The notes beneath the pieces are model-generated. The model saw only the letters and a list, made by a program, of their open reading frames with translations. It was not told where the DNA came from and ran no database searches. Below are positions 5,439-61,389 of a stretch of DNA of 64,000 nucleotides, one piece after another (the stretch's first letter is position 1; every line of letters begins with the position of its first letter). The stretch is taken from positions 69,998,001 to 70,062,000 of the forward strand of contig NC_043004.1 of assembly GCF_006345805.1 (NCBI RefSeq). The letters are read 5' to 3'. The position numbers and the translations under genes are program-made. Origin of the DNA: Octopus sinensis (taxonomy: Eukaryota).

Positions 5439-6238
5439 CTGTAAAAGTCATGGGCATTATCTTCTCTATCATCAACAGCATCATCATGAACAACAACAAT
5501 GCCTGGCCCTCACTGTTTTGCGCCACATAAAAAGCACTGATGCCATGTAAAAAGCACCCAGTACACTCTGTGGAGTAGTTGGTGTTAGGAAGGGCATTCA
5601 GCTGTAGAAATCAAGCCAAAACAGACTATGGAACCGGGTGTGGCTCCTGGCCTTGCCCCTTCTTGTCAAGCCATCCAACCTATCCCAGCATGGAAAACAG
5701 ATGTTAAATGTTCATGATGATGATAATGGTTTTGTGTGTTTGTATGTGTCTCTGTCTATGTTAAAATCTCTTGAAAAGAAAAAGAAAAAAAAGAATCTAT
5801 GTTTATTTCCAGCAAACTTAGTAGCGTGACAAACAGATCAATTTGCTAAATCCAGTTTCCTTGATTGAACAAAAAAAAGTGCCATTCTTACTTTACAGTT
5901 GGGTTTAGGTGGCAGTGGCACCCAATTGAACACTTTACAGGAACACAAGCTCTTGTAGTAGTGGTAGAACAAGCAGCTCCATTGCAAGTATGGGTGTGTG
6001 GCTAAGGAGCTCACTTTGCACCCACATGGTTATGAGTTCAGTTCCATAGTGTGGCAGTATGCACAAGTGTCTTCTATGGCCCAGAGCAACCAATGTCTTG
6101 TGAATGAATTTGGTCAATAGAAACTGTGTGGAATCCTCTGTGCAGTAGGAAGGGCACCCAGCAGTAACTGCTCCAACTAGTAAAACATCTCATCCATGCA
6201 AAAACACACCATCAAATGTATGAAGGTGCATGTATGTG

Positions 6239-47309: not shown

Positions 47310-47641
47310 TAAGAGGGAGACAGACAAATATACATACGTGTGTGTATATACATATACATGCTTCTTTTTCGGATATCATACATTGACGAAATATATATAG
47401 AGAGAGATAGATAGATAGATAGATAGATAGATATACACACACACAAAGAGAGAGATACACTGGTTATTATATGGTAGGAATATTGAGAGAAACTGAAACA
47501 GTAACAGAAATACATTTTACATTTATCTCTCTTTTATGTACCCGTACCCGACCAAATTTATAAATCTAGATCGATACATATATATATATATATATATAGG
47601 TGTGTATGAATACACGATGGAGTAGTAGAAGACAGCCTTAC

Positions 47642-47673
47642 CGTTTCAAATATCTGGCTTCATCAGCCTGCAT
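47642..47673 (-). CDS. Candidate first coding exon (MQADEARYLKR, phase 2) of an unidentified minus-strand gene; 5' UTR probably extends to about 48100
   Basis: ATG at 47673-47671 and donor AAACG|GTAAGG at 47642/47641. The upstream sequence is non-repetitive and CpG-retaining and is bounded by a (GA)n tract at about 48124. Confidence 0.4.
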
Positions 47674-48110
47674 CTTGGAACATCCTATAAACTCCAAACT
47701 CCAGTCGCCAGCAGCAGCAAATCGTCCAAAATATTGCAAAGACAAAATTCCATGAAAATAAAAAACAAACACAAAAAGATACTAAACGTAGGCTGGTTTC
47801 GCTTTCCTTCTTTCTTTTTTCTTTTTTTTTTGTGGTTGTTATTTGCCTTCGATACTGTTTAAAATTTACACAAATAATAAATATAAATATATATTTATAT
47901 ACAAAATATTGTATCTGTTTTCTTTTCTTTTTTTTTTTTTTTCATGTACAAGAAAATACGAAAGTTATGCTAGAAGAAGCGGCAATTTTAGACATTATAT
48001 CAACCTGAAGAGCTGATACGATAAGAATTACAAGAGGGAGGAAGGGGTGGCTACGAAAAACGATCGGGATGCTTCGGATTTTTCCGTCAAGTTAGTGTAC
48101 TTTTGTATGC

Positions 48111-48728: not shown

Positions 48729-49238
48729 GGATCTTTTCTTTTTGAACGGCACTTTCTAACAATTTCTAGGTAACTAAAAAGTTTTAAACTTCGTATACTG
48801 GTAGAATGTGTTTATAAAACATCATTTTCTCTTGGCTTTATTGAGAAAATTCTATAGTTTGTAAGATATTTCGTCTGAAATTTCGAGCATTTCGGCAATT
48901 TTAACCAATCAATTACCTCCATTGATGTAAACAACATTCCGTGCTGTATGAATATGTCCCTCGTTTAAGAAACAGATTGGGTTTATTTACATTTGTAAAT
49001 AAAAAAGGATACCCTTCCCCCACCCCTAACCCTAAATTTAAAATAGATTGAAATACAATAGATCGATACTACGGCCATAATTATGGGTGACATTTTCATT
49101 TGACACCGCTAGAAAAAAATCCCATTTTCCGTAGCAGTGTCGTATGAAATTGTCACCTATAATTATAACCCTAGTATCGATCTATTGCATTTCAATCTAT
49201 TTTAGAGTTAGGGTTAGGGGTGGGGGAAGGGTATCTTT
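48729..49238. mobile_element. Rearranged copy of the same MULE-like family (left TIR plus internal fold-back)
   Basis: Starts ggatcttttctttttgaacggc and shares gtttaagaaacagattgggtttatttacatt and ccctaaccctaa segments with 56310-57282. An older relative lies at about 26797-27100. Confidence 0.7.
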
Positions 49239-54699: not shown

Positions 54700-54930
54700 T
54701 CGAATCCAAGAGCAAACAACTCCTCGCTGTCTTGGCAACGACGGATCTCGCGAGATTCCCGCCACATCGTCTCCATTGTTTTTTGGGGTTGGTCGAAAGT
54801 TTCCCTCATTTCGGGGCAGATTTTTATGTTTTATTTCATGTTTTGTGGGGAAACAGTAAAAAGACCAACTTTTATGGGACGTTCTCAAAGATAATTCATC
54901 TACTGAGTAAATTTTGAATAGCAGGTAAGA
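54700..54930 (+). promoter_or_regulatory. Candidate CpG-rich promoter and non-coding first exon of the plus-strand gene
   Basis: Perfect palindrome ATCTCGCGAGAT at 54745-54756, X-box-like GCTGTCTTGGCAAC just upstream, CpG-rich context, and a consensus donor GCAG|GTAAGA at 54924/54925. Confidence 0.55.
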
Positions 54931-56309
54931 TTAAAAAGCATTTTTTAATTAAAGCCTAGCTCCGTGTTTTATTGTTTGTGTAGTTTGATGGAAAGAGGAA
55001 AGAAAACAAGTTAAGGGGTCCCCACTGCCAATTAGTGTGCTTAATTAGCGTCTAATTAAGAAGCTAGGAGAATATACTATTTTCAAATTATTTCATTGTT
55101 TGTAAATTCCCACACTTTGTCTTTGTATATCTCCTCATCCGTCGCAAATAAAAGAAAATAATTAATATTTCTGAGCTTTTCTATTTTTTTTTTGTAAGGC
55201 ATAATTAATGTGTAATCGATTGTTGATTGGTGAAAGTGAAAGTTGTGCACCAAAGCTCGACGATTGTCAGCATGTAAGGAATGCACCAAATCGCAATATC
55301 TAGTGTGGCCTTTCTTTTCTCTAACACGAGTATGTTTTGAGAGAGACATGACTGCTATTTCTTGAAGGTCGTGCGTCGGCGTGTAGGCTTCCCTCGTTGC
55401 TTCTGAGTAGTAAACAGTTGGTGTTTTGCGCCTATCTGAATAGATCCAGTCAGCCCCTTCGACGCATCGATCTAAAATCATCAAGAAGCATGAAGCCAAT
55501 GAAAGAGTTTTCATATAGTCACTCGACATGCTAGAAATAGCAGTCAGATCTTCCTTATTTTATACCCAACTGCCTCGAGGAAAGAAAAGAGACGCATTAG
55601 ATAATCTAATCCCGATGGTCATACCCAGATAGAATGTCTTTTGATCATATGTTTGTTTAATCCGCATTGACTTGGAAACTGAAAGAACAACCGTGTATTT
55701 AATCTAGATCCTTTCTGATCTTAATCCGTCTGTGAGAAATATTAAAGGATGATCTTGGATTATAGCGTGTCACTTTCACTTTGTCGAACTGTAGTTGGGT
55801 TCAGTTTGTTTTTGGTACCTGTAGAATTTTTGTTTTCGTGCCAGCTTGTTTGTCTAGGACATAGTTTTGGGGGCAATTATTGTACACATAAGCTGGGCAA
55901 AGTGAAACCCAATGCCAAATCGAAAGTAGGCTTTCACTTACACGCAGCACTTTTCGGCATTCCCAGTTTATATGTACAGTAATCGAAAGAGCGGCAGTAA
56001 TTGTTATTTGTGCTATTGTTGCGGTTGATTTTTCCTGCTGTCTGAGATTCTGAAGAATTCTTGTTGTTAGATTTGGTTATGACTTCTGATGATCGCATAA
56101 GAAGCTCCATAATAAGGTAAAAAAAAAGAAGTCATCACGTTGAATGCCTCGTCCGATCACCAAAGTTAAGCAACGTTGAGCTTAGTACTTAGGTGCCCCC
56201 TTGAGAAACCTCGGTGCTCTAAGCATCTTGCTTTCAAATTTTTGCACAAGGCCAGCAATTTCTGGTACTTACTTTATCGATTCCGAAAGGAGGAAAGGGC
56301 ACAGACGAC

Positions 56310-57282
56310 GGATATTTTCGCTTTGACCGGCAGATTTTTAAAATAATTTCTTTGTAACTAAACACTTTTAAACTTCTTTTTCTCTTAGCTTTCTTGAAAA
56401 AATTCTGTGGTTTGTAAGCTATTTGTTGTTTAATTTCTTGCATTTCGGCAATTTCAACCAATCAATGACGACTATTGAGGTGAATACAATTTCTCTGGAT
56501 CTTTGTCAACAACAATTATTTGCGGTGTCATATGAAATTGTCCCTGTTATTTATGACATATTTCATATCAGTTACGTTCGTATGAATAAAAGATTATCGT
56601 TATTAAACTTTTATTAATAAACACATATTCTAAGTTCACAACATATGCAGTTTTAATTTCCCTCTCTGTTGCACAAATACACACATTACATATTATATAT
56701 TCATTTAAGAAACAGATTGGGTTTATTTACATTTCTGAAGAAAAAAAGATATCCTTCCCCCCACCCCTATCCCTAACCTTAACCCTAACCCTACCCTAAC
56801 CCTAACTCTAACCCTAGCCCAACCCTAACGCTAACCCTAACCCTAACTCTAGCCCTAACTAACTCTAACCCTAACACAAATCGAAATGCAATAGATCGAT
56901 ACTAGGGTCATAATTATAGGTGGACACTAAAGAGGGAATGGCTTTGTTATCCAGCTCTGTTTATGAGAGACCCCTCAGTTTATGGCCACATGGTATCCTT
57001 TTTCTCATAAATAACAGGAACAAATTCATATGACGCCGCAAATAATTGTTGTTGACAAAGATTTGGAGAAATTGTATTCATCTCATTAGACATCATTGAT
57101 TGGTTGAAATTGCCGAAATGCAAGAAATTAAACAACAAATAGCTTACAAACTACAGAATTTTTTCAAGAAAGCCAAAAGAAAAAGGTGTTTCATAAACAC
57201 ATTCTACCAGTATACAAAGTTTAAAAGTGTTTAGTTACAAAGAAATTATTTTAAAAATCTGCCGGTCAAAGCGAAAAGATCC
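56310..57282. mobile_element. MULE/MuDR-like non-autonomous element with about 250-bp TIRs and an internal telomere-like (CCCTAA)n tract
   Basis: Termini ggatattttcgctttgaccggcag / ctgccggtcaaagcgaaaagatcc, exact 8-bp TSD cagacgac (56302-56309 and 57283-57290), and the insertion splits a SINE C copy. Confidence 0.8.
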
Positions 57283-57565
57283 CAGACGACCTCGGTGGTG
57301 TCTGAACTCAGAACATAAAGGTGGACGAAATGGCGCGGTGATGTTTCTGTCAGCTTGCTGCCTAACTCTTTCAAATGTTATAATACTAATACAAATACTA
57401 ACCACACTAGAGTGCAATATCATTGCATAACAATGTTTACACCAATCACACAAGATTCCAATATCATAACAATGCTTGAATTCCATCATCCATTATTGTG
57501 ACACATGTCATAATTGTAGCATCCACTGTGGTCACAAACTGTTGGCCAATTTAGTAACTTTCACA

Positions 57566-57727
57566 GGCGTAGCAGTGGCTGTGTGGTAAGTAGCTTGCTT
57601 ACGAACCACATGGGTCCGGGTTCAGTCCCACTGTGTGGCACCTTGGGCAAGTGTCTTCTACTTTAGCCTCTGGCCGACCAAAGCCTTGTGAGTGGATTTG
57701 GTAGACGGAAACTGAAAGAAGCCCGTC

Positions 57728-57767
<40 letters not shown>

Positions 57768-57996
57768 ATATGTACGTGTGTATATATGTTTGTGTGTCTG
57801 TGTTTGTCCCCCAACATCGCTTGACAACCGATGGTGGTGTGTTTACGTCCCTGTAACTTAGCAGTTCGGCAAAAAAGACTGATAGATTAAGTACTAGGCT
57901 TACAAAGAATAAGTCCTGGGGTCGATTTGCTCGACTAAAGGCAGTGCTCCAGCATGGCCACAGTCAAATGACTGAAACAAGTAAAAGAGTAAAGAG
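57566..57996 (+). mobile_element. SINE family A, full length
   Basis: Near consensus copy. Confidence 0.9.
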
Positions 57997-59631
57997 TGAT
58001 CACAATATTTCAGTGTTATAACATTATATTTTCTGCTAGAAATAGCTGTCAAATCTCCTTTATCATCATTGTCATCACCATCATCATCATTATTATTTTA
58101 ATGTCCATTTTTCCATGCCTGCATGAGATGGATTTTCTGTGATTGGTTGTGCTTCTTGTCAGCAAGCCTCACCTGTTTCCAGATACAGATAAGGGAATAT
58201 TCTCTCACAATCAAACTTGTTTTCCCTTAAGATTGGAAACAAAGGACACCACTTGCATGATGGTGGCACTCGTTTACAATTATCACATGTATTCAAGGCA
58301 AGGAGACAGCAACAAAAACACATGTATACATATATATACAAATATGACGGGCTTCTTTCCGTTTCTGTCTACCAAATCTACTCACAAAGCTTTGGTTGGC
58401 CTGAGGCTATAGTAGAAGACACTTGTCCAAGGTGCCATGCAGTGTTAAGACAAGGAGACACAAATGAATATATTATCAAGGCATTGTTTTACAGCTTGAT
58501 GCAAAACACCTAGTCACCTCTTGTGCAGCACTGATGCAATGTGGAACACCATTGAGTGCAAGGTATGATTTATTTGTTTAACATTTAAACCAGGCTTATC
58601 GAACCCAAATATTCTACTTGTTTTAATGTTCAAACTGGTCGCATCCAGCCTCTCACACATCTCCTACAATGTCATTCTTAAAAAATAAACATTCACATCA
58701 TCAAAATATCAAAGTTATGTGATAATACATGATTAGTTCAAAACAATGTGAATAAATAAGCTTGTTTGTGTGTTGTGTTCTTGCACAAGACACTTTATTT
58801 CATGTTGCTGCAGTTCACTCATCTGTAGAAATGAGTTGTGACATCTCTGGTGCCAAGCTGTATTGGGCCTTTGCCTATCCCCTGGATGACATCGGTGGTG
58901 TGGAGAGGGGAAGCTGGTATGCATGGGCGACTGCTGGTCTTCCATAAACCACTTTGCCTGGACTTGTGCATTGGAGAGGAACATTTTGGGTGCAGTCTCA
59001 TGGTCCTTCATGACTGAAGGGGGTCTTTATCCTTTTACTTTTGACAGAAAAATCTGAAAGGTAAAAAGTTAAAAAACTGATTGGAACTGTCCAGTGTATA
59101 AGTGGTAGAAGCAGAGCTTTGCATAAAAAGATGACTTTCTGTGCCAAAGGATTTGTGATGTTTTGAGCTGGGTTATTTATAAGGGTATGAATGGAGTTTT
59201 GTCTTCTGCTTTAATTTCTCATGTTACCCTTTTTTATTCTGCTGCTCCTAGTGCCAGTGGTGGTTGGGGGCTTTGACTTGTCTTTCTTTCATCATTCATT
59301 CATTCCTTTCAGAAAACAATAAGACAATACCTACGATATACTGGGGAAGCCTGATTCAATCACCTTATAGTTGTTCCTCTTAACAGACCATCTTGTATTT
59401 ATATTTTGCTGTTATATGTTCTATTTTTTTTAATTATCATTGTGTCTCTTGTATTTTTATGTTCAATTAACATGTTTTAAATATTTATTACCATAATAAT
59501 AATAATAATAATAGTAATAATAATAATAATAACGATTATAATAATAATATTGTTATTATTTCAAAATGAAGTATAGGTCTCTAGGTTGGGGATCAGTTTA
59601 CTGTTTTGATTTTTTTTCAGAGTGCCCAGCT

Positions 59632-60111
59632 ATGTGTGACCAAAGCCCTTACAGTATAGAGGAGAGACTGATAGCCTCTGTTTGGATGCATGAGCGTGTA
59701 CGAAACCGACAGAAAGTTCCAGAGATAAGACGAGCGTTTGAGCAGCGCTTTGGGAAGCAGGCTCCCACTCCTCGGATTTTACGTGAGTGGGAAAAGAAAG
59801 TTTTTGAGACCGGCAGTGTTCTGGATGCTTCTCGCTGTGGGCGGCCGGCGACATCTACTGAGCACATTGTGGCTGTGGAACAGTCAATCTTGAACTCACC
59901 AACGCAATCGACACGAAAGCGCTCAGCTGAGCTGCAAATACCTAGAAGTACTTTACAAAAAGTAATGAAACTTAATTTACAGCGTAAAGCATTGAACATG
60001 AACAAAACAACAGACACCTCTGTTCATGAAACAGAAGCTCTTGCTAATAACAATAACAATAATAATAATAATAATATTAATAATGATAATAATGACGATG
60101 ATGTTCAATAA
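59632..60111 (+). CDS. Transposase-derived helix-turn-helix protein (DUF4817-type Tc1/mariner N-terminal DNA-binding region), 159 aa, no DDE/D domain, poly-Asn tail; candidate domesticated gene
   Basis: Uninterrupted ORF MCDQSPYSIEERLIASVWMHER...RRAFEQRFGKQAPTPRILREWEKKVFETGSVLDASRCGRP...VEQSILNSPTQSTRKRSAELQIPRSTLQKVMKLNL matches the paired-like bipartite HTH pattern of Tc1/mariner transposases (F..TGSV.D..R.GRP; P..STRK.S.EL.I.RST). A strong acceptor ttttgattttttttcag lies at 59604-59620, 11 nt before the ATG, and AATAAA follows the stop directly. Confidence 0.8.
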   Translation: MCDQSPYSIEERLIASVWMHERVRNRQKVPEIRRAFEQRFGKQAPTPRILREWEKKVFETGSVLDASRCGRPATSTEHIVAVEQSILNSPTQSTRKRSAELQIPRSTLQKVMKLNLQRKALNMNKTTDTSVHETEALANNNNNNNNNNINNDNNDDDVQ

Positions 60112-60907
60112 TAAAAAGGATGAAGCCATGTTTCTATTTGCTCTCAATTTTTTTGTTTTTGAAATATTTAAGCTTATGTCATACAGTTACATTTGGAAGA
60201 GACAAACAAAGAAATTCTCTTTGACCTGTCAGATGTATACATACACATACATGTATGTATATTTGTGTGTGTGTATGTACATGTACGTGAGTGCTTGATT
60301 GGTTAATTGCAATTTTAAATTTCAGGAGAAAACTTGAAGGGAAAGATACATGAGAATACTCACTAATAAGAATTGTGTAAAAACTATACAGTACTTTTGT
60401 TGTTGAATCAATTGATAGAGGTTGCTGCTGCTGCTGCTTTAATTATGAAGTAATTACCATTTTCATCACCGTCATAAACATCATCAGTGCCTCTACTACC
60501 ATCGTCATCATTACCTGTCAATTGTAGGAAATTGATTGATTTTATAGACATAGGCATGGCTGTGTGGTAGAGAAGTTTGCACCTTGCGCAAGGATTTTTT
60601 TTACTGTAATCCCAGGTTGACCAATGCACTGTGAGTGAATTAGGTGGAGAGGAAACTGTACGAAATCCATCATATATTCTTTTACTTGTTTCAGTCATTT
60701 GATTGCGGCCATGCTCGAGTACCACCTTAAAGGGATTTTAGTCAAAGAAATGCCCCCCCCCCCCCCCGCCAGGACTTATTCTCTGTAAGCCCAGTACTCA
60801 TTCTATCAGTCTCTTTGGCTGAACCACTAAGTTATGGAGACAAAAACACACCAACATCAGTTGTCAAGCAATGGTAGGAGGGAACAAACGCAGACACGCA
60901 CATTAAT

Positions 60908-60938
<31 letters not shown>

Positions 60939-61389
60939 CACACACACATACAATAGGTTTCTTTCAGTTTCCATCTACCAGATCCACCCACAATGCTTTG
61001 GTTGGCCTGAGGCTATAGTAAAGTGGTTTGCAACCTTTTCACTACCACAGACCCCTTTTATATAAATAAGTTTTCCCATGGACCCCAGGATATTGAAAGG
61101 TCTTATTTCTTTATTACCCACACCTATACCCATACAAACTTGGGTTACTTACCCTTATCTGGTTATTGTGCCATTGTAAATGTGTTAAAAAAATTTGAGC
61201 CTACTGATAAAAAAAAAGGTAAGTCGACCCCAATGATGTAATTAGCATGATAATTAATGTCTTATCATTCCTATGTAATTTTAATTATGTTAATCACTTT
61301 GTTTCTTTCTTTCTAGAAAGTGGTTTTTATGAATTTTTTGTTTTAACTTGTTGAGTGCCCTTAACCTTTGCAGGCCCTCCAAGACTAGT

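What the first reader, a model, noticed from the sequence alone, without database searches (positions are those of the whole stretch)
59604..60120. Candidate domesticated Tc1/mariner DNA-binding domain gene (DUF4817-type HTH only)
Seen: an intact 159-aa ORF carries the complete bipartite HTH region of a Tc1/mariner transposase and then switches abruptly, right after the second HTH (KLNL), to an unrelated Thr/Asn-rich tail. No DDE/D domain or TIRs are visible nearby. A canonical acceptor sits 11 nt before the ATG and AATAAA follows the stop. Many CpG-containing Arg/Ala/Pro codons are preserved although the flanks are CpG-depleted. Known: transposase DNA-binding domains have repeatedly been exapted as host transcription factors (for example the SETMAR and PAX-type paired domains). 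Inference: this is a spliced host gene encoding a transposon-derived sequence-specific DNA-binding protein, possibly lineage-specific, that could bind dispersed TIR/MITE sites or act as a dominant-negative transposase repressor. I cannot tell whether it has already been annotated.
Basis: partly seen in the sequence, partly recalled or inferred. Interest (0 to 1): 0.75.

Follow-up and report, generated by a model that had tools for sequence, protein, structure and literature searches.

The report
Domesticated mariner DNA-binding gene in octopus
This is a small host gene that keeps only the DNA-binding half of an old mariner-type jumping-gene enzyme; it sits at the same chromosomal spot in Octopus and Argonauta and is under strong purifying selection, so it is a real but not unprecedented case of a transposon turned into a probable gene regulator.

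Summary
An intact 159-codon ORF runs from 59632 to 60111. An acceptor lies 11 nt upstream of the ATG, and AATAAA overlaps the stop. Residues 1-116 form two three-helix HTH units joined by an RCGRP linker. They are homologous to the N-terminus of 350-aa DDE_3 (Tc1/mariner) transposases and to the SETMAR DNA-binding domain.

There is no DDE remnant and no TIR. The inverted repeats that flank the ORF are copies of a dispersed SINE-like repeat.

The Argonauta hians orthologue lies at the same place, divergent from KIFAP3 exon 1. Between the two, synonymous sites are saturated (pS 0.73) and pN is 0.067. The proposed non-coding exon 1, with its donor at 54924|54925, and the acceptor are both conserved in Argonauta.

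Transcript-like contigs of relatives join different 5' sequences at this acceptor. One paralogue has a confirmed GT-AG intron. The HTH-only proteins form one clade (91% bootstrap) of at least four subclades, two of them in octopods.

Verdict: a domesticated, DNA-binding-domain-only mariner derivative, most likely a sequence-specific DNA-binding regulator. It is a new member of a known kind. The target sites, the function and transcription of this particular locus remain untested.

The parts
54700..54924 (+). Candidate promoter-proximal region and non-coding exon 1 (5' UTR). The 5' limit is uncertain. It contains the palindromic TCTCGCGAGA motif at 54746-54755 and a conserved upstream ATG (TTTTATGG).
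   Evidence: It aligns with Argonauta L001 9135-9386, with conserved blocks AATCCAAGAGCAAACAACTC, GCGAGA and TTTTATGG. CpG o/e is 1.12. It is unique in the window. No RNA data for this species.
54925..59620 (+). Putative 4.7-kb 5'-UTR intron. The donor is CAG|GTAAGA at 54924|54925 and the acceptor is TTTTTTTTCAG| ending at 59620. It is filled with dispersed repeats and a foldback element.
   Evidence: The donor CAG|GTAAG is conserved in Argonauta at L001 9386|9387. A polypyrimidine tract plus CAG acceptor lies 8-13 nt before the ATG in all 5 genomic loci of the family.
59556..59620 (+). Conserved 3' end of the intron: a GGGATCAGTT(T/C)A block (possible branch-point region), the polypyrimidine tract and the acceptor.
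   Evidence: 77% identity to Argonauta L001 9922-9991, while the rest of the intron does not align. The block is also present in L003.
59621..59631 (+). The 11 nt of 5' UTR at the start of exon 2.
   Evidence: Sequence. Transcript-like contigs of relatives diverge from one another or from genomic DNA at the equivalent point.
59632..59811 (+). CDS residues 1-60: first three-helix HTH (helices 9-21, 29-40, 47-60).
   Evidence: AlphaFold2 pLDDT is 94-97 over residues 11-50. 53% of positions are invariant across 13 HTH-only proteins. Sub-threshold DUF4817 match at residues 31-63.
59812..59853 (+). CDS residues 61-74: linker GSVLDASRCGRPAT, carrying the RCGRP motif.
   Evidence: 64% of positions are invariant in the clade. 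R.GRP is also conserved in the full-length transposases. A role in minor-groove contact is inferred from knowledge of Tc1/mariner and paired domains; it was not tested.
59854..59979 (+). CDS residues 75-116: second three-helix HTH (helices 75-88, 94-101, 105-115), including RKRSAELQIP.
   Evidence: The profile matches the SETMAR DNA-binding domain 7s03 over positions 16-114 (E 1.2e-4). The top Foldseek matches are SETMAR, Mos1 and Pax6.
59980..60108 (+). CDS residues 117-159: disordered Asn/Asp/Thr-rich tail encoded by an in-frame (AAT)n microsatellite. It ends in VQ.
   Evidence: pLDDT is below 50 for residues 120-159. No homology to transposases. Self-similarity to the intronic (AAT)n at 59487-59552. 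The Argonauta tail is poly-Asn/Thr but ends in the same VQ-stop.
60109..60115 (+). Stop codon TAA (60109-60111) overlapped by the polyadenylation signal AATAAA (60110-60115).
   Evidence: ATGTTCAATAA.AAAAA is conserved with Argonauta.
47641..47774 (-). Synteny anchor: exon 1 of KIFAP3 (kinesin-associated protein 3). The ATG is at 47673, the peptide is MQADEARYLKR, followed by a GT donor. It is divergent from the HTH gene.
   Evidence: 78% DNA identity to Argonauta L001 5722-5875, where an 834-aa KAP-domain gene starts at 5772 on the minus strand.

Best explanation
The locus is a two-exon host gene. It has a non-coding exon 1 ending at 54924, a 4.7-kb intron, and exon 2 from 59621 carrying the whole CDS (59632-60111) and its own poly(A) signal.

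It arose by domestication of the N-terminal DNA-binding module of a DDE_3 (Tc1/mariner, mariner-like DDD) transposase. It encodes a 159-aa protein made of a paired-like bipartite HTH (HTH1, RCGRP linker, HTH2) and a disordered low-complexity tail. It has no catalytic domain.

It belongs to a small family of HTH-only genes with at least four subclades, two of them present in octopods. The family descends from one ancestral truncated copy and has been kept under purifying selection.

The most likely mode of action is sequence-specific DNA binding through the two HTH units, without cutting. That would make it a transcriptional or chromatin regulator. The tail, and in paralogue B the retained transposase linker, would serve as a partner-binding or spacer region.

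Shown here: ORF anatomy, homology, fold, loss of DDE and TIRs, synteny, purifying selection, conservation of the splice signals, and spliced transcript-like contigs in relatives.

Inferred: transcription and splicing at this locus, DNA binding, and the regulatory role.
For: **Anatomy.**

**Homology.**
- The closest relatives are HTH-only proteins of Argonauta (80% identity) and Octopus (71%), plus unnamed contigs.
- Full-length relatives of 351-378 aa carry DDE_3 above Pfam's threshold, for example P0186 at 50.9 bits.
- tblastn with four transposase relatives covers only residues up to about 120 of the ORF and nothing else nearby.

**Fold.**
- The model has six helices in two triplets, with a disordered tail.
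- Foldseek's top matches are the SETMAR DNA-binding domain on TIR DNA, Mos1, and the Pax6/Pax5 paired domains.
- The profile matches SETMAR 7s03 at E 1.2e-4.

**Synteny.** KIFAP3 exon 1 (minus strand) and the ORF (plus strand) are arranged the same way in the window and in Argonauta.

**Selection.**
- Window against Argonauta over codons 1-117: 60 of 82 synonymous sites differ, against 18 of 269 non-synonymous sites. That gives pS 0.73, pN 0.067 and Fisher p 9e-33.
- Every pair from different subclades has saturated pS (0.77-0.98) with pN 0.12-0.23. The within-subclade pair L003-L005 has pS 0.30 and pN 0.07 (ω 0.20).
- All five genomic copies are intact.

**Phylogeny.** The HTH-only clade has 91% bootstrap support and short branches. 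Window plus Argonauta_A has 94%.

**Gene structure.**
- The acceptor is conserved in all loci.
- Exon 1 and its donor are conserved in Argonauta.
- The stop and AATAAA are conserved.

**Transcripts in relatives.**
- L005 and L006 diverge exactly at the acceptor.
- Clade D has two alternative 5' ends, seen among contigs from 18 runs of one series.
- L007 spans a canonical GT-AG intron of L004.

**Copy number.**
- There is one copy in the 64-kb window.
- Two are annotated in Argonauta.
- The snail Bradybaena, by contrast, carries many truncated copies of variable length.
Against: - There are no RNA reads for this species, so exon 1, the junction and expression at this locus rest on conservation and on relatives.
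- The exact 159-aa product is not on record in the protein collection, so it is apparently unannotated in Octopus assemblies.
- DNA binding and any target are untested.
- The Foldseek scores are weak (best E 0.024, TM about 0.3), because the two HTH units are placed arbitrarily in the model.
- The organisms behind 9 of the 13 clade members are unknown, so the age and the taxonomic breadth ('cephalopod-wide') are not established.
- The NJ tree uses only 118 positions, and support among the subclades is low (33-36%).
- One paralogue has an extra 3' coding exon, so a longer isoform at this locus cannot be excluded.
Confidence: 0.78

Rival explanations
1. The gene is a transposon-control factor. 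The catalytically dead DNA-binding domain would bind the TIRs of cognate mariner-like elements, or their MITEs, and block transposase access or form poisoned complexes. This is dominant-negative repression rather than regulation of host genes.
For: The protein is precisely the TIR-binding module of a transposase. Truncated transposases acting as repressors are established biology (from knowledge, for example the P-element KP protein). HTH1 and the linker are nearly invariant across paralogues, as if the target were shared.
Against: No cognate full-length element or other remnant is found in the window or in the 20-kb spans of the four other genomic loci. No named cephalopod full-length transposase appears among the hits. 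Constraint held at one site over a divergence deep enough to saturate synonymous sites, together with several ancient paralogues, is more than a transient arms-race function usually leaves. This is a sub-mechanism of the best explanation rather than a contradiction of it.
Confidence: 0.15
2. The ORF is only the first coding exon of a longer product. A donor inside or before the low-complexity tail would splice to downstream exon(s), as in paralogue C, so the 159-aa protein would be one isoform or an artefact of reading into an intron.
For: Paralogue C has a GT-AG intron in its tail and a second coding exon. The prokaryote-style gene call P0005 at that locus reads through the intron. The tail here is poorly conserved.
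Against: The last codons (VQ), the stop and the overlapping AATAAA are conserved between the window and Argonauta, although the tail between them is not. The Argonauta annotation is a single coding exon. The transcript-like contigs of the sister subclade (L005, L006) read colinearly through the stop into a 3' UTR ending near AATAAA.
Confidence: 0.08
3. It is a decaying, truncated transposon copy with no host function, whose open frame survives by chance or because it inserted recently.
For: It has transposase homology, sits in a repeat-rich setting, and has a low-complexity tail.
Against: It is orthologous and syntenic in Argonauta, with saturated synonymous but few non-synonymous changes (Fisher p 9e-33). 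The ORFs are intact at five loci. The splice signals and poly(A) signal are conserved. There are no TIRs and no dispersed copies. CpG is retained only in the constrained coding part.
Confidence: 0.02

Closest known systems
Drosophila CG4570 and cag (Tc1/mariner-derived genes that keep only the HTH DNA-binding module; Guseva et al., BMC Biol 2026, PMC13548663)
   Same: The route of domestication is the same. Only the N-terminal HTH module of a Tc1/mariner transposase is retained, the protein is much shorter than the roughly 340-aa ancestor, microsynteny is conserved, and there is strong purifying selection (CG4570 dN/dS is 0.124 in that paper; pN/pS is about 0.09 here).
   Different: It is an independent event in molluscs rather than flies. 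Here it forms a small multi-paralogue family with a conserved 5'-UTR intron. Sequence relatedness to CG4570 was not tested. The function is unknown in both cases.
SETMAR (Metnase), the DNA-binding domain of Hsmar1 mariner (PDB 7s03)
   Same: It is the best sequence and structure match among solved structures. Both are bipartite HTH domains that bind TIR DNA and have been exapted by the host.
   Different: SETMAR keeps the whole transposase, including the altered catalytic domain, fused to a SET methyltransferase domain, and it is primate-specific. The gene here keeps only the DNA-binding module and is fused to nothing recognisable.
Pax paired domain (Pax6 6pax, Pax5 1k78, Prd 1pdn)
   Same: It has the same architecture of two three-helix units joined by a linker, and it appears among the top structural matches. 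A transposase ancestry for the paired domain is textbook knowledge.
   Different: There is no sequence-level membership: no Pfam PAX match and only 13-16% identity in the structural alignments. It has no homeodomain or octapeptide.
Visitor/DD41D and related mariner-like (DDD) families of Tc1/mariner (named in bioRxiv 10.1101/2022.10.13.512200 and PMC5490172)
   Same: The closest full-length relatives have an F(S/T)DE ... QQDGAP ... SPDLxxxD layout. There are 85-88 residues between the first two motif Asp residues and 40-46 between the second and the last. That is a DDD, mariner-like signature in the DD41D range.
   Different: No phylogeny against reference Visitor, maT or mariner transposases was made. 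Which Asp of SPDLxxxD is catalytic is assumed by analogy with Mos1 (from memory). The window gene itself has no catalytic domain at all.
Octopus LOC106876238 / LOC115212318 / O. vulgaris CAI9722633 ('uncharacterized' or 'DUF4817 domain-containing protein')
   Same: It is a paralogue (71% identity) in the same HTH-only clade, with the same acceptor before the ATG. Octopus and Argonauta copies share one ≥90%-identity cluster.
   Different: It lies at another, non-syntenic locus. It retains about 30 further residues of the transposase linker (VYEVQN.DED.KVEVCRVMFQKFP) in place of the poly-Asn tail.

Membership tests
Tc1/mariner (IS630-Tc1-mariner) transposase | N-terminal bipartite HTH DNA-binding domain homologous to that of family members | tested here: met
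   tblastn and HMMER match residues 1 to about 120 to the N-termini of DDE_3-bearing proteins. SETMAR DNA-binding domain at E 1.2e-4. Six-helix model.
Tc1/mariner (IS630-Tc1-mariner) transposase | DDE/DDD catalytic domain | tested here: not met
   There is no DDE_3 match in the protein and no remnant in any frame in the window or within 10 kb either side of the ORF at the related genomic loci. It is therefore derived from a transposase but is not one.
Tc1/mariner (IS630-Tc1-mariner) transposase | Terminal inverted repeats flanking the coding region | tested here: not met
   The only flanking inverted repeats are copies of a dispersed repeat with at least 15 copies in the window.
Pfam PF16087 (DUF4817 HTH) | Score at or above the gathering threshold (22.6 bits) | tested here: not met
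   18.3 bits, E 1.8e-3, residues 31-63. Seven of 18 family members match at E<0.01, with a best E of 1.5e-3. A distant full-length relative, P0095, passes at 25.1 bits. So it is related to DUF4817 but is not a formal member.
Domesticated transposase gene (criteria as used by Guseva et al. 2026) | Orthologues at a conserved syntenic position | tested here: met
   The KIFAP3 exon 1 and ORF arrangement is shared with Argonauta hians.
Domesticated transposase gene (criteria as used by Guseva et al. 2026) | Purifying selection on the coding sequence | tested here: met
   pN 0.067 against pS 0.73, Fisher p 9e-33. These are pairwise Nei-Gojobori estimates only. No codon-model likelihood test was run.
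Domesticated transposase gene (criteria as used by Guseva et al. 2026) | Low copy number with loss of mobility features | tested here: inconclusive
   One copy in the window. Two paralogues are annotated in Argonauta and one in each Octopus species. The whole genome of the source species could not be searched.
Domesticated transposase gene (criteria as used by Guseva et al. 2026) | Transcription as a host gene | tested here: inconclusive
   Spliced transcript-like contigs exist for three other subclades, and the splice signals are conserved here. No RNA data were available for this locus or species.
Visitor/DD41D family of Tc1/mariner (as ancestor) | DDD triad with 41 residues between the second and third Asp, and phylogenetic placement with Visitor | tested here: inconclusive
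   The spacing in the closest full-length relatives is 40-46 by motif position. No reference sequences were available for a tree.
Pax/paired-domain transcription factors | Sequence match to the PAX domain profile | tested here: not met
   No PAX match in Pfam at E<=1. There is only fold-level resemblance.
eIF1/SUI1 (the name carried by the Argonauta orthologue) | SUI1 domain or similarity to eIF1B | tested here: not met
   There is no SUI1 match. BLASTP of the Argonauta protein against human EIF1B gives E=11. There are no eIF1B exons in the window or in any fetched locus. The name is an annotation error.

The most novel reading that the evidence does not exclude
A single ancient truncation of a Visitor-like mariner transposase, before the octopod-decapod split, gave coleoid cephalopods a private family of paired-like DNA-binding proteins. 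The family would have four conserved paralogue lineages that share an almost invariant first HTH and linker. These proteins would read a dispersed, transposon-seeded set of sites and so wire a cephalopod-specific regulatory network, much as the older birth of Pax genes did.
Probability: 0.25. Interest if true: 0.65.

Novelty: new member of a known kind. Interest (0 to 1): 0.45.

Why it matters
Cephalopod genomes are known for lineage-specific gene families and heavy transposon loads. This adds a clean, testable case of a transposase DNA-binding module kept as a host gene family over a long time. It has defined orthologues, paralogues and gene structure. The library's survey of transposon-derived transcription factors, which included Octopus, did not cover mariner HTH genes (PMC10027918).

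It also flags two annotation problems. This paralogue appears to be unannotated in Octopus, and its Argonauta orthologue is mislabelled as eIF1b-like.

If the proteins bind dispersed transposon-derived sites, they would give a handle on how repeats became regulatory DNA in cephalopods.

Tried and rejected
- **eIF1b link.** The Argonauta orthologue is named 'eIF1b-like isoform X1'. I looked for eIF1B exons in the window and in all loci and found none, so the name is rejected.
- **TIRs.** The inverted repeats around the ORF are dispersed SINE-like copies.
- **Intron-bearing transposase.** There are no downstream DDE exons at any locus.
- **tblastx of the Argonauta locus against the window.** One search gave only low-complexity noise. 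blastn and targeted tblastn or regular expressions gave the synteny instead.
- **Exact-sequence look-up of the 159-aa product.** It is not on record, so the source assembly and any transcripts of this species could not be retrieved.
- **CWC25.** It is the downstream neighbour in Argonauta but was not found in the remaining 3.9 kb of the window. Given the roughly threefold larger spacing here, it is probably beyond the window's end.
- **KIFAP3 exon 1 near L003 and L004.** It was not found within 10 kb, so synteny for those loci is unresolved.
- **Organisms behind the run and assembly accessions.** The one accession found in the paper library (ERR1712142) was not followed up and the rest were not found, so none of these organisms was identified.
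- **Literature.** Searches for DUF4817 and for cephalopod mariner domestication found no description of this family.
- **TLEWI.** The intron-bearing Tc1-like elements of bivalves are DD36E and are reported absent from cephalopods. They are not the same thing.
Full report
**1. What is in the sequence**

The reading frame is as described. The ATG is at 59632, the stop TAA at 60109-60111, and the product is 159 residues. The mechanical ORF list gives a 181-aa version starting at 59566. That ATG lies in the polypyrimidine stretch before the acceptor and is not conserved. Every homologue begins M[CS]DQSPY.

The string ttttttttcag|AG ends at 59620, 11 nt before the ATG. AATAAA (60110-60115) overlaps the stop.

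The coding part for residues 1-118 has 48% G+C and a CpG observed/expected ratio of 0.89. The 2-kb flanks have 0.20-0.32.

**2. What the protein is**

Pfam gives only a sub-threshold DUF4817 match (18.3 bits against a cut-off of 22.6; residues 31-63). Seven of 18 relatives behave likewise.

Database searches are far clearer:
- The nearest proteins are HTH-only proteins of Argonauta hians (80% identity), Octopus (71%) and unnamed contigs (66-79%).
- Next come many truncated copies in the snail Bradybaena similaris (about 50-57%).
- Then come full-length proteins of 351-378 aa at 45-57% identity, whose C-terminal two thirds match DDE_3, several above Pfam's threshold.
- An exhaustive HMMER search finds 3013 cluster representatives at E≤1e-3.

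The full-length relatives carry F(S/T)DE, QQDGAP and SPDLxxxD motifs, with 85-88 and 40-46 residues between the motif Asp residues. That is a mariner-like DDD signature in the range of the Visitor/DD41D family. This label is tentative because no reference phylogeny was made.

The AlphaFold2 model shows six helices: 9-21, 29-40, 47-60, then 75-88, 94-101, 105-115. A 14-residue linker carrying RCGRP joins the two triplets, and the tail from residue 120 is disordered. Foldseek's best PDB matches are the SETMAR DNA-binding domain bound to Hsmar1 TIR DNA, the Mos1 transposase, and the Pax6/Pax5 paired domains. The family profile matches the SETMAR domain by sequence at E 1.2e-4.

**3. What is missing**

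tblastn with four transposase relatives (three near full length, one truncated) covers only the first 120 or so residues of the ORF. It finds nothing else in the 64-kb window. The same is true within 10 kb either side of the ORF at four related genomic loci.

The inverted repeats that bracket the ORF (57659-57919 and 60769-61020) are copies of a dispersed repeat of about 260 bp, present at least 15 times in the window in both orientations. The ORF region itself is unique in the window apart from its (AAT)n microsatellite.

So this is a DNA-binding module with no catalytic domain and no transposon ends.

**4. Orthology and selection**

In Argonauta hians the orthologue lies between a KAP-domain gene (KIFAP3, minus strand) and CWC25. 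In the window, exon 1 of KIFAP3 (MQADEARYLKR, then a GT donor) sits at 47641-47673 on the minus strand. It is 78% identical in DNA to the Argonauta exon. Apart from short repeat matches and the exon-1 blocks found with a more sensitive search (section 5), the ORF is the only other stretch that aligns between the two loci.

Over codons 1-117, 60 of 82 synonymous sites differ but only 18 of 269 non-synonymous sites do. That gives pS 0.73, pN 0.067 and Fisher p 9e-33. Comparisons between subclades show saturated pS (0.77-0.98) with pN 0.12-0.23.

A neutral transposon relic could not keep an open frame and this pattern at one chromosomal site over such a divergence.

**5. Gene structure**

All five genomic loci of the family have a polypyrimidine tract and a CAG acceptor 8-13 nt before the ATG. 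The loci are the window, Argonauta, the O. bimaculoides paralogue, and two contigs of an unnamed assembly.

Window 54700-54924 aligns with Argonauta L001 9135-9386. The conserved blocks are AATCCAAGAGCAAACAACTC, a GCGAGA core (TCTCGCGAGA in the window, 54746-54755), TTTTATGG, and the donor CAG|GTAAG. The surrounding intergenic and intronic DNA does not align. The last 65 nt of the intron are also conserved, and so are the final VQ codons, the stop and AATAAA.

Direct RNA evidence exists only for relatives:
- Two contigs from different sequencing runs encode the same protein and are identical downstream, but they diverge exactly at the acceptor. One of them carries an intron-like ...ctcag before it.
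- Contigs from 18 runs of one series encode the clade-D protein. In the eight that were aligned, two alternative 5' ends join 12 nt before the ATG.
- Contig L007 skips a 2.7-kb canonical GT-AG intron of genomic locus L004.

I therefore regard the two-exon structure at this locus as strongly inferred, not shown.

**6. The family**

A neighbour-joining tree of the 118 shared positions groups all 13 HTH-only proteins in one clade (91% of 100 bootstraps). Its branches are short compared with those of the transposases. It contains four subclades:
- A: window plus Argonauta (94%), with three unnamed sequences as sister (84%).
- B: the annotated Octopus and Argonauta paralogue (100%).
- C: 100%.
- D: 100%.

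Subclade B's Octopus and Argonauta copies fall in one ≥90%-identity cluster. It is annotated as 'uncharacterized protein LOC106876238/LOC115212318' and, in UniProt, as a DUF4817 domain-containing protein. It is not syntenic with the window. It retains about 30 more residues of the transposase linker in place of the poly-Asn tail.

Within the clade, 53% of HTH1 positions, 64% of linker positions and 31% of HTH2 positions are invariant. No position is invariant after residue 116.

The unnamed genomic loci share no repeats with the window, whereas O. bimaculoides shares many, at up to 93% identity. The window is therefore from Octopus or a close relative. The unnamed sequences come from something more distant, plausibly other cephalopods. 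I could not establish this.

**7. How it most likely works**

The protein is the TIR-recognition module of a mariner-type transposase with the nuclease removed. The constraint is concentrated on the helices and on the R.GRP linker. From what is known of Mos1, SETMAR, Tc3 and paired domains, this linker lies in the DNA grooves.

The best-supported mechanism is sequence-specific DNA binding without catalysis, that is, a transcriptional or chromatin regulator. The disordered microsatellite-derived tail would act as a loosely constrained appendage.

It cannot be excluded. It is less favoured because no cognate elements were seen and because several paralogues have been kept for a long time.

A longer isoform using a downstream exon is possible by analogy with subclade C. 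The conserved stop and poly(A) signal argue against it.

**8. Comparison with what is known**

Co-option of only the HTH module of Tc1/mariner transposases is documented in Drosophila for CG4570 and cag, using the same criteria of synteny and purifying selection (PMC13548663). SETMAR and the Pax paired domain are the classical relatives.

[quoted passage not shown] The intron-bearing Tc1-like TLEWI genes of bivalves are DD36E and are reported absent from cephalopods.

I found no paper describing this family. It is therefore a new member of a known kind. It is real and well supported as a domesticated gene, it is of moderate interest, and its function is unknown.

**9. Limits**

- No RNA data or whole genome of the source species were available.
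- Selection was measured with pairwise Nei-Gojobori counts only.
- The tree is distance-based on a short alignment.
- The taxa of most family members are unknown.
- DNA binding is inferred from homology and a predicted fold.

Noticed in passing
window 56310-57282: A foldback-like element lies inside the putative intron. Its inverted arms are about 250-280 nt long and 84-92% complementary. They enclose a 448-nt spacer that carries an interstitial run of telomere-type repeats, (CCCTAA)n with variants, at about 56760-56870. Related pieces lie at 48817-49217.
   Followed up: partly
window 47641-47774 (- strand): Exon 1 of KIFAP3 (kinesin-associated protein 3): peptide MQADEARYLKR followed by a GT donor. 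Most of the window below 47641 is therefore probably KIFAP3 intron 1.
   Followed up: partly
Argonauta hians proteins GAB1600301.1 (L001 10001-10477) and GAB1604875.1: Both HTH-only proteins are named 'eukaryotic translation initiation factor 1b-like isoform X1' in the deposited annotation. They show no similarity to eIF1B, and no eIF1B exons lie nearby. The name looks like an annotation-transfer error.
   Followed up: yes
window 60032-60100 and 59487-59552: The poly-Asn tail is an in-frame (AAT)n microsatellite of the same type as the one in the intron just upstream. The Argonauta tail is instead Asn then poly-Thr. The tail therefore seems to evolve by triplet slippage, while the terminal VQ-stop is kept.
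   Followed up: partly
window 59580-59592; L001 9946-9958; L003 about 9955: A block GGGATCAGTT(T/C)A, about 30-40 nt upstream of the acceptor, is conserved in three subclade-A loci. The rest of the intron is not alignable. It may be a branch-point region or a regulatory element.
   Followed up: no
window about 54866-54890; L001 about 9331: An upstream ATG within the conserved TTTTATGG block of the candidate 5'-UTR exon opens a short uORF in both species (MGRSQR* in the window, 14 codons in Argonauta).
   Followed up: no
window 54746-54755: The palindromic TCTCGCGAGA motif sits in the candidate promoter/exon 1. From memory it is a common core-promoter element of animal housekeeping genes. In Argonauta it is only partly conserved, as CTGCGAGAC.
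   Followed up: no
Bradybaena similaris proteins (e.g. P0011, P0012, P0014, P0018, P0019, P0175, P0187): The snail carries many copies of the same transposase N-terminus, truncated or internally deleted at different points. Several lie on one chromosome-scale contig. This is the pattern of a decaying transposon family and a useful contrast with the cephalopod genes.
   Followed up: partly
L004 10001-10735 (protein P0005): The 244-aa gene call at this locus reads through a GT-AG intron into unrelated sequence. That sequence includes a classical mariner-like fragment (HPEYSPDLVSLDYHVF). The real product is the spliced 185/186-aa form seen in L007 and L018.
   Followed up: yes
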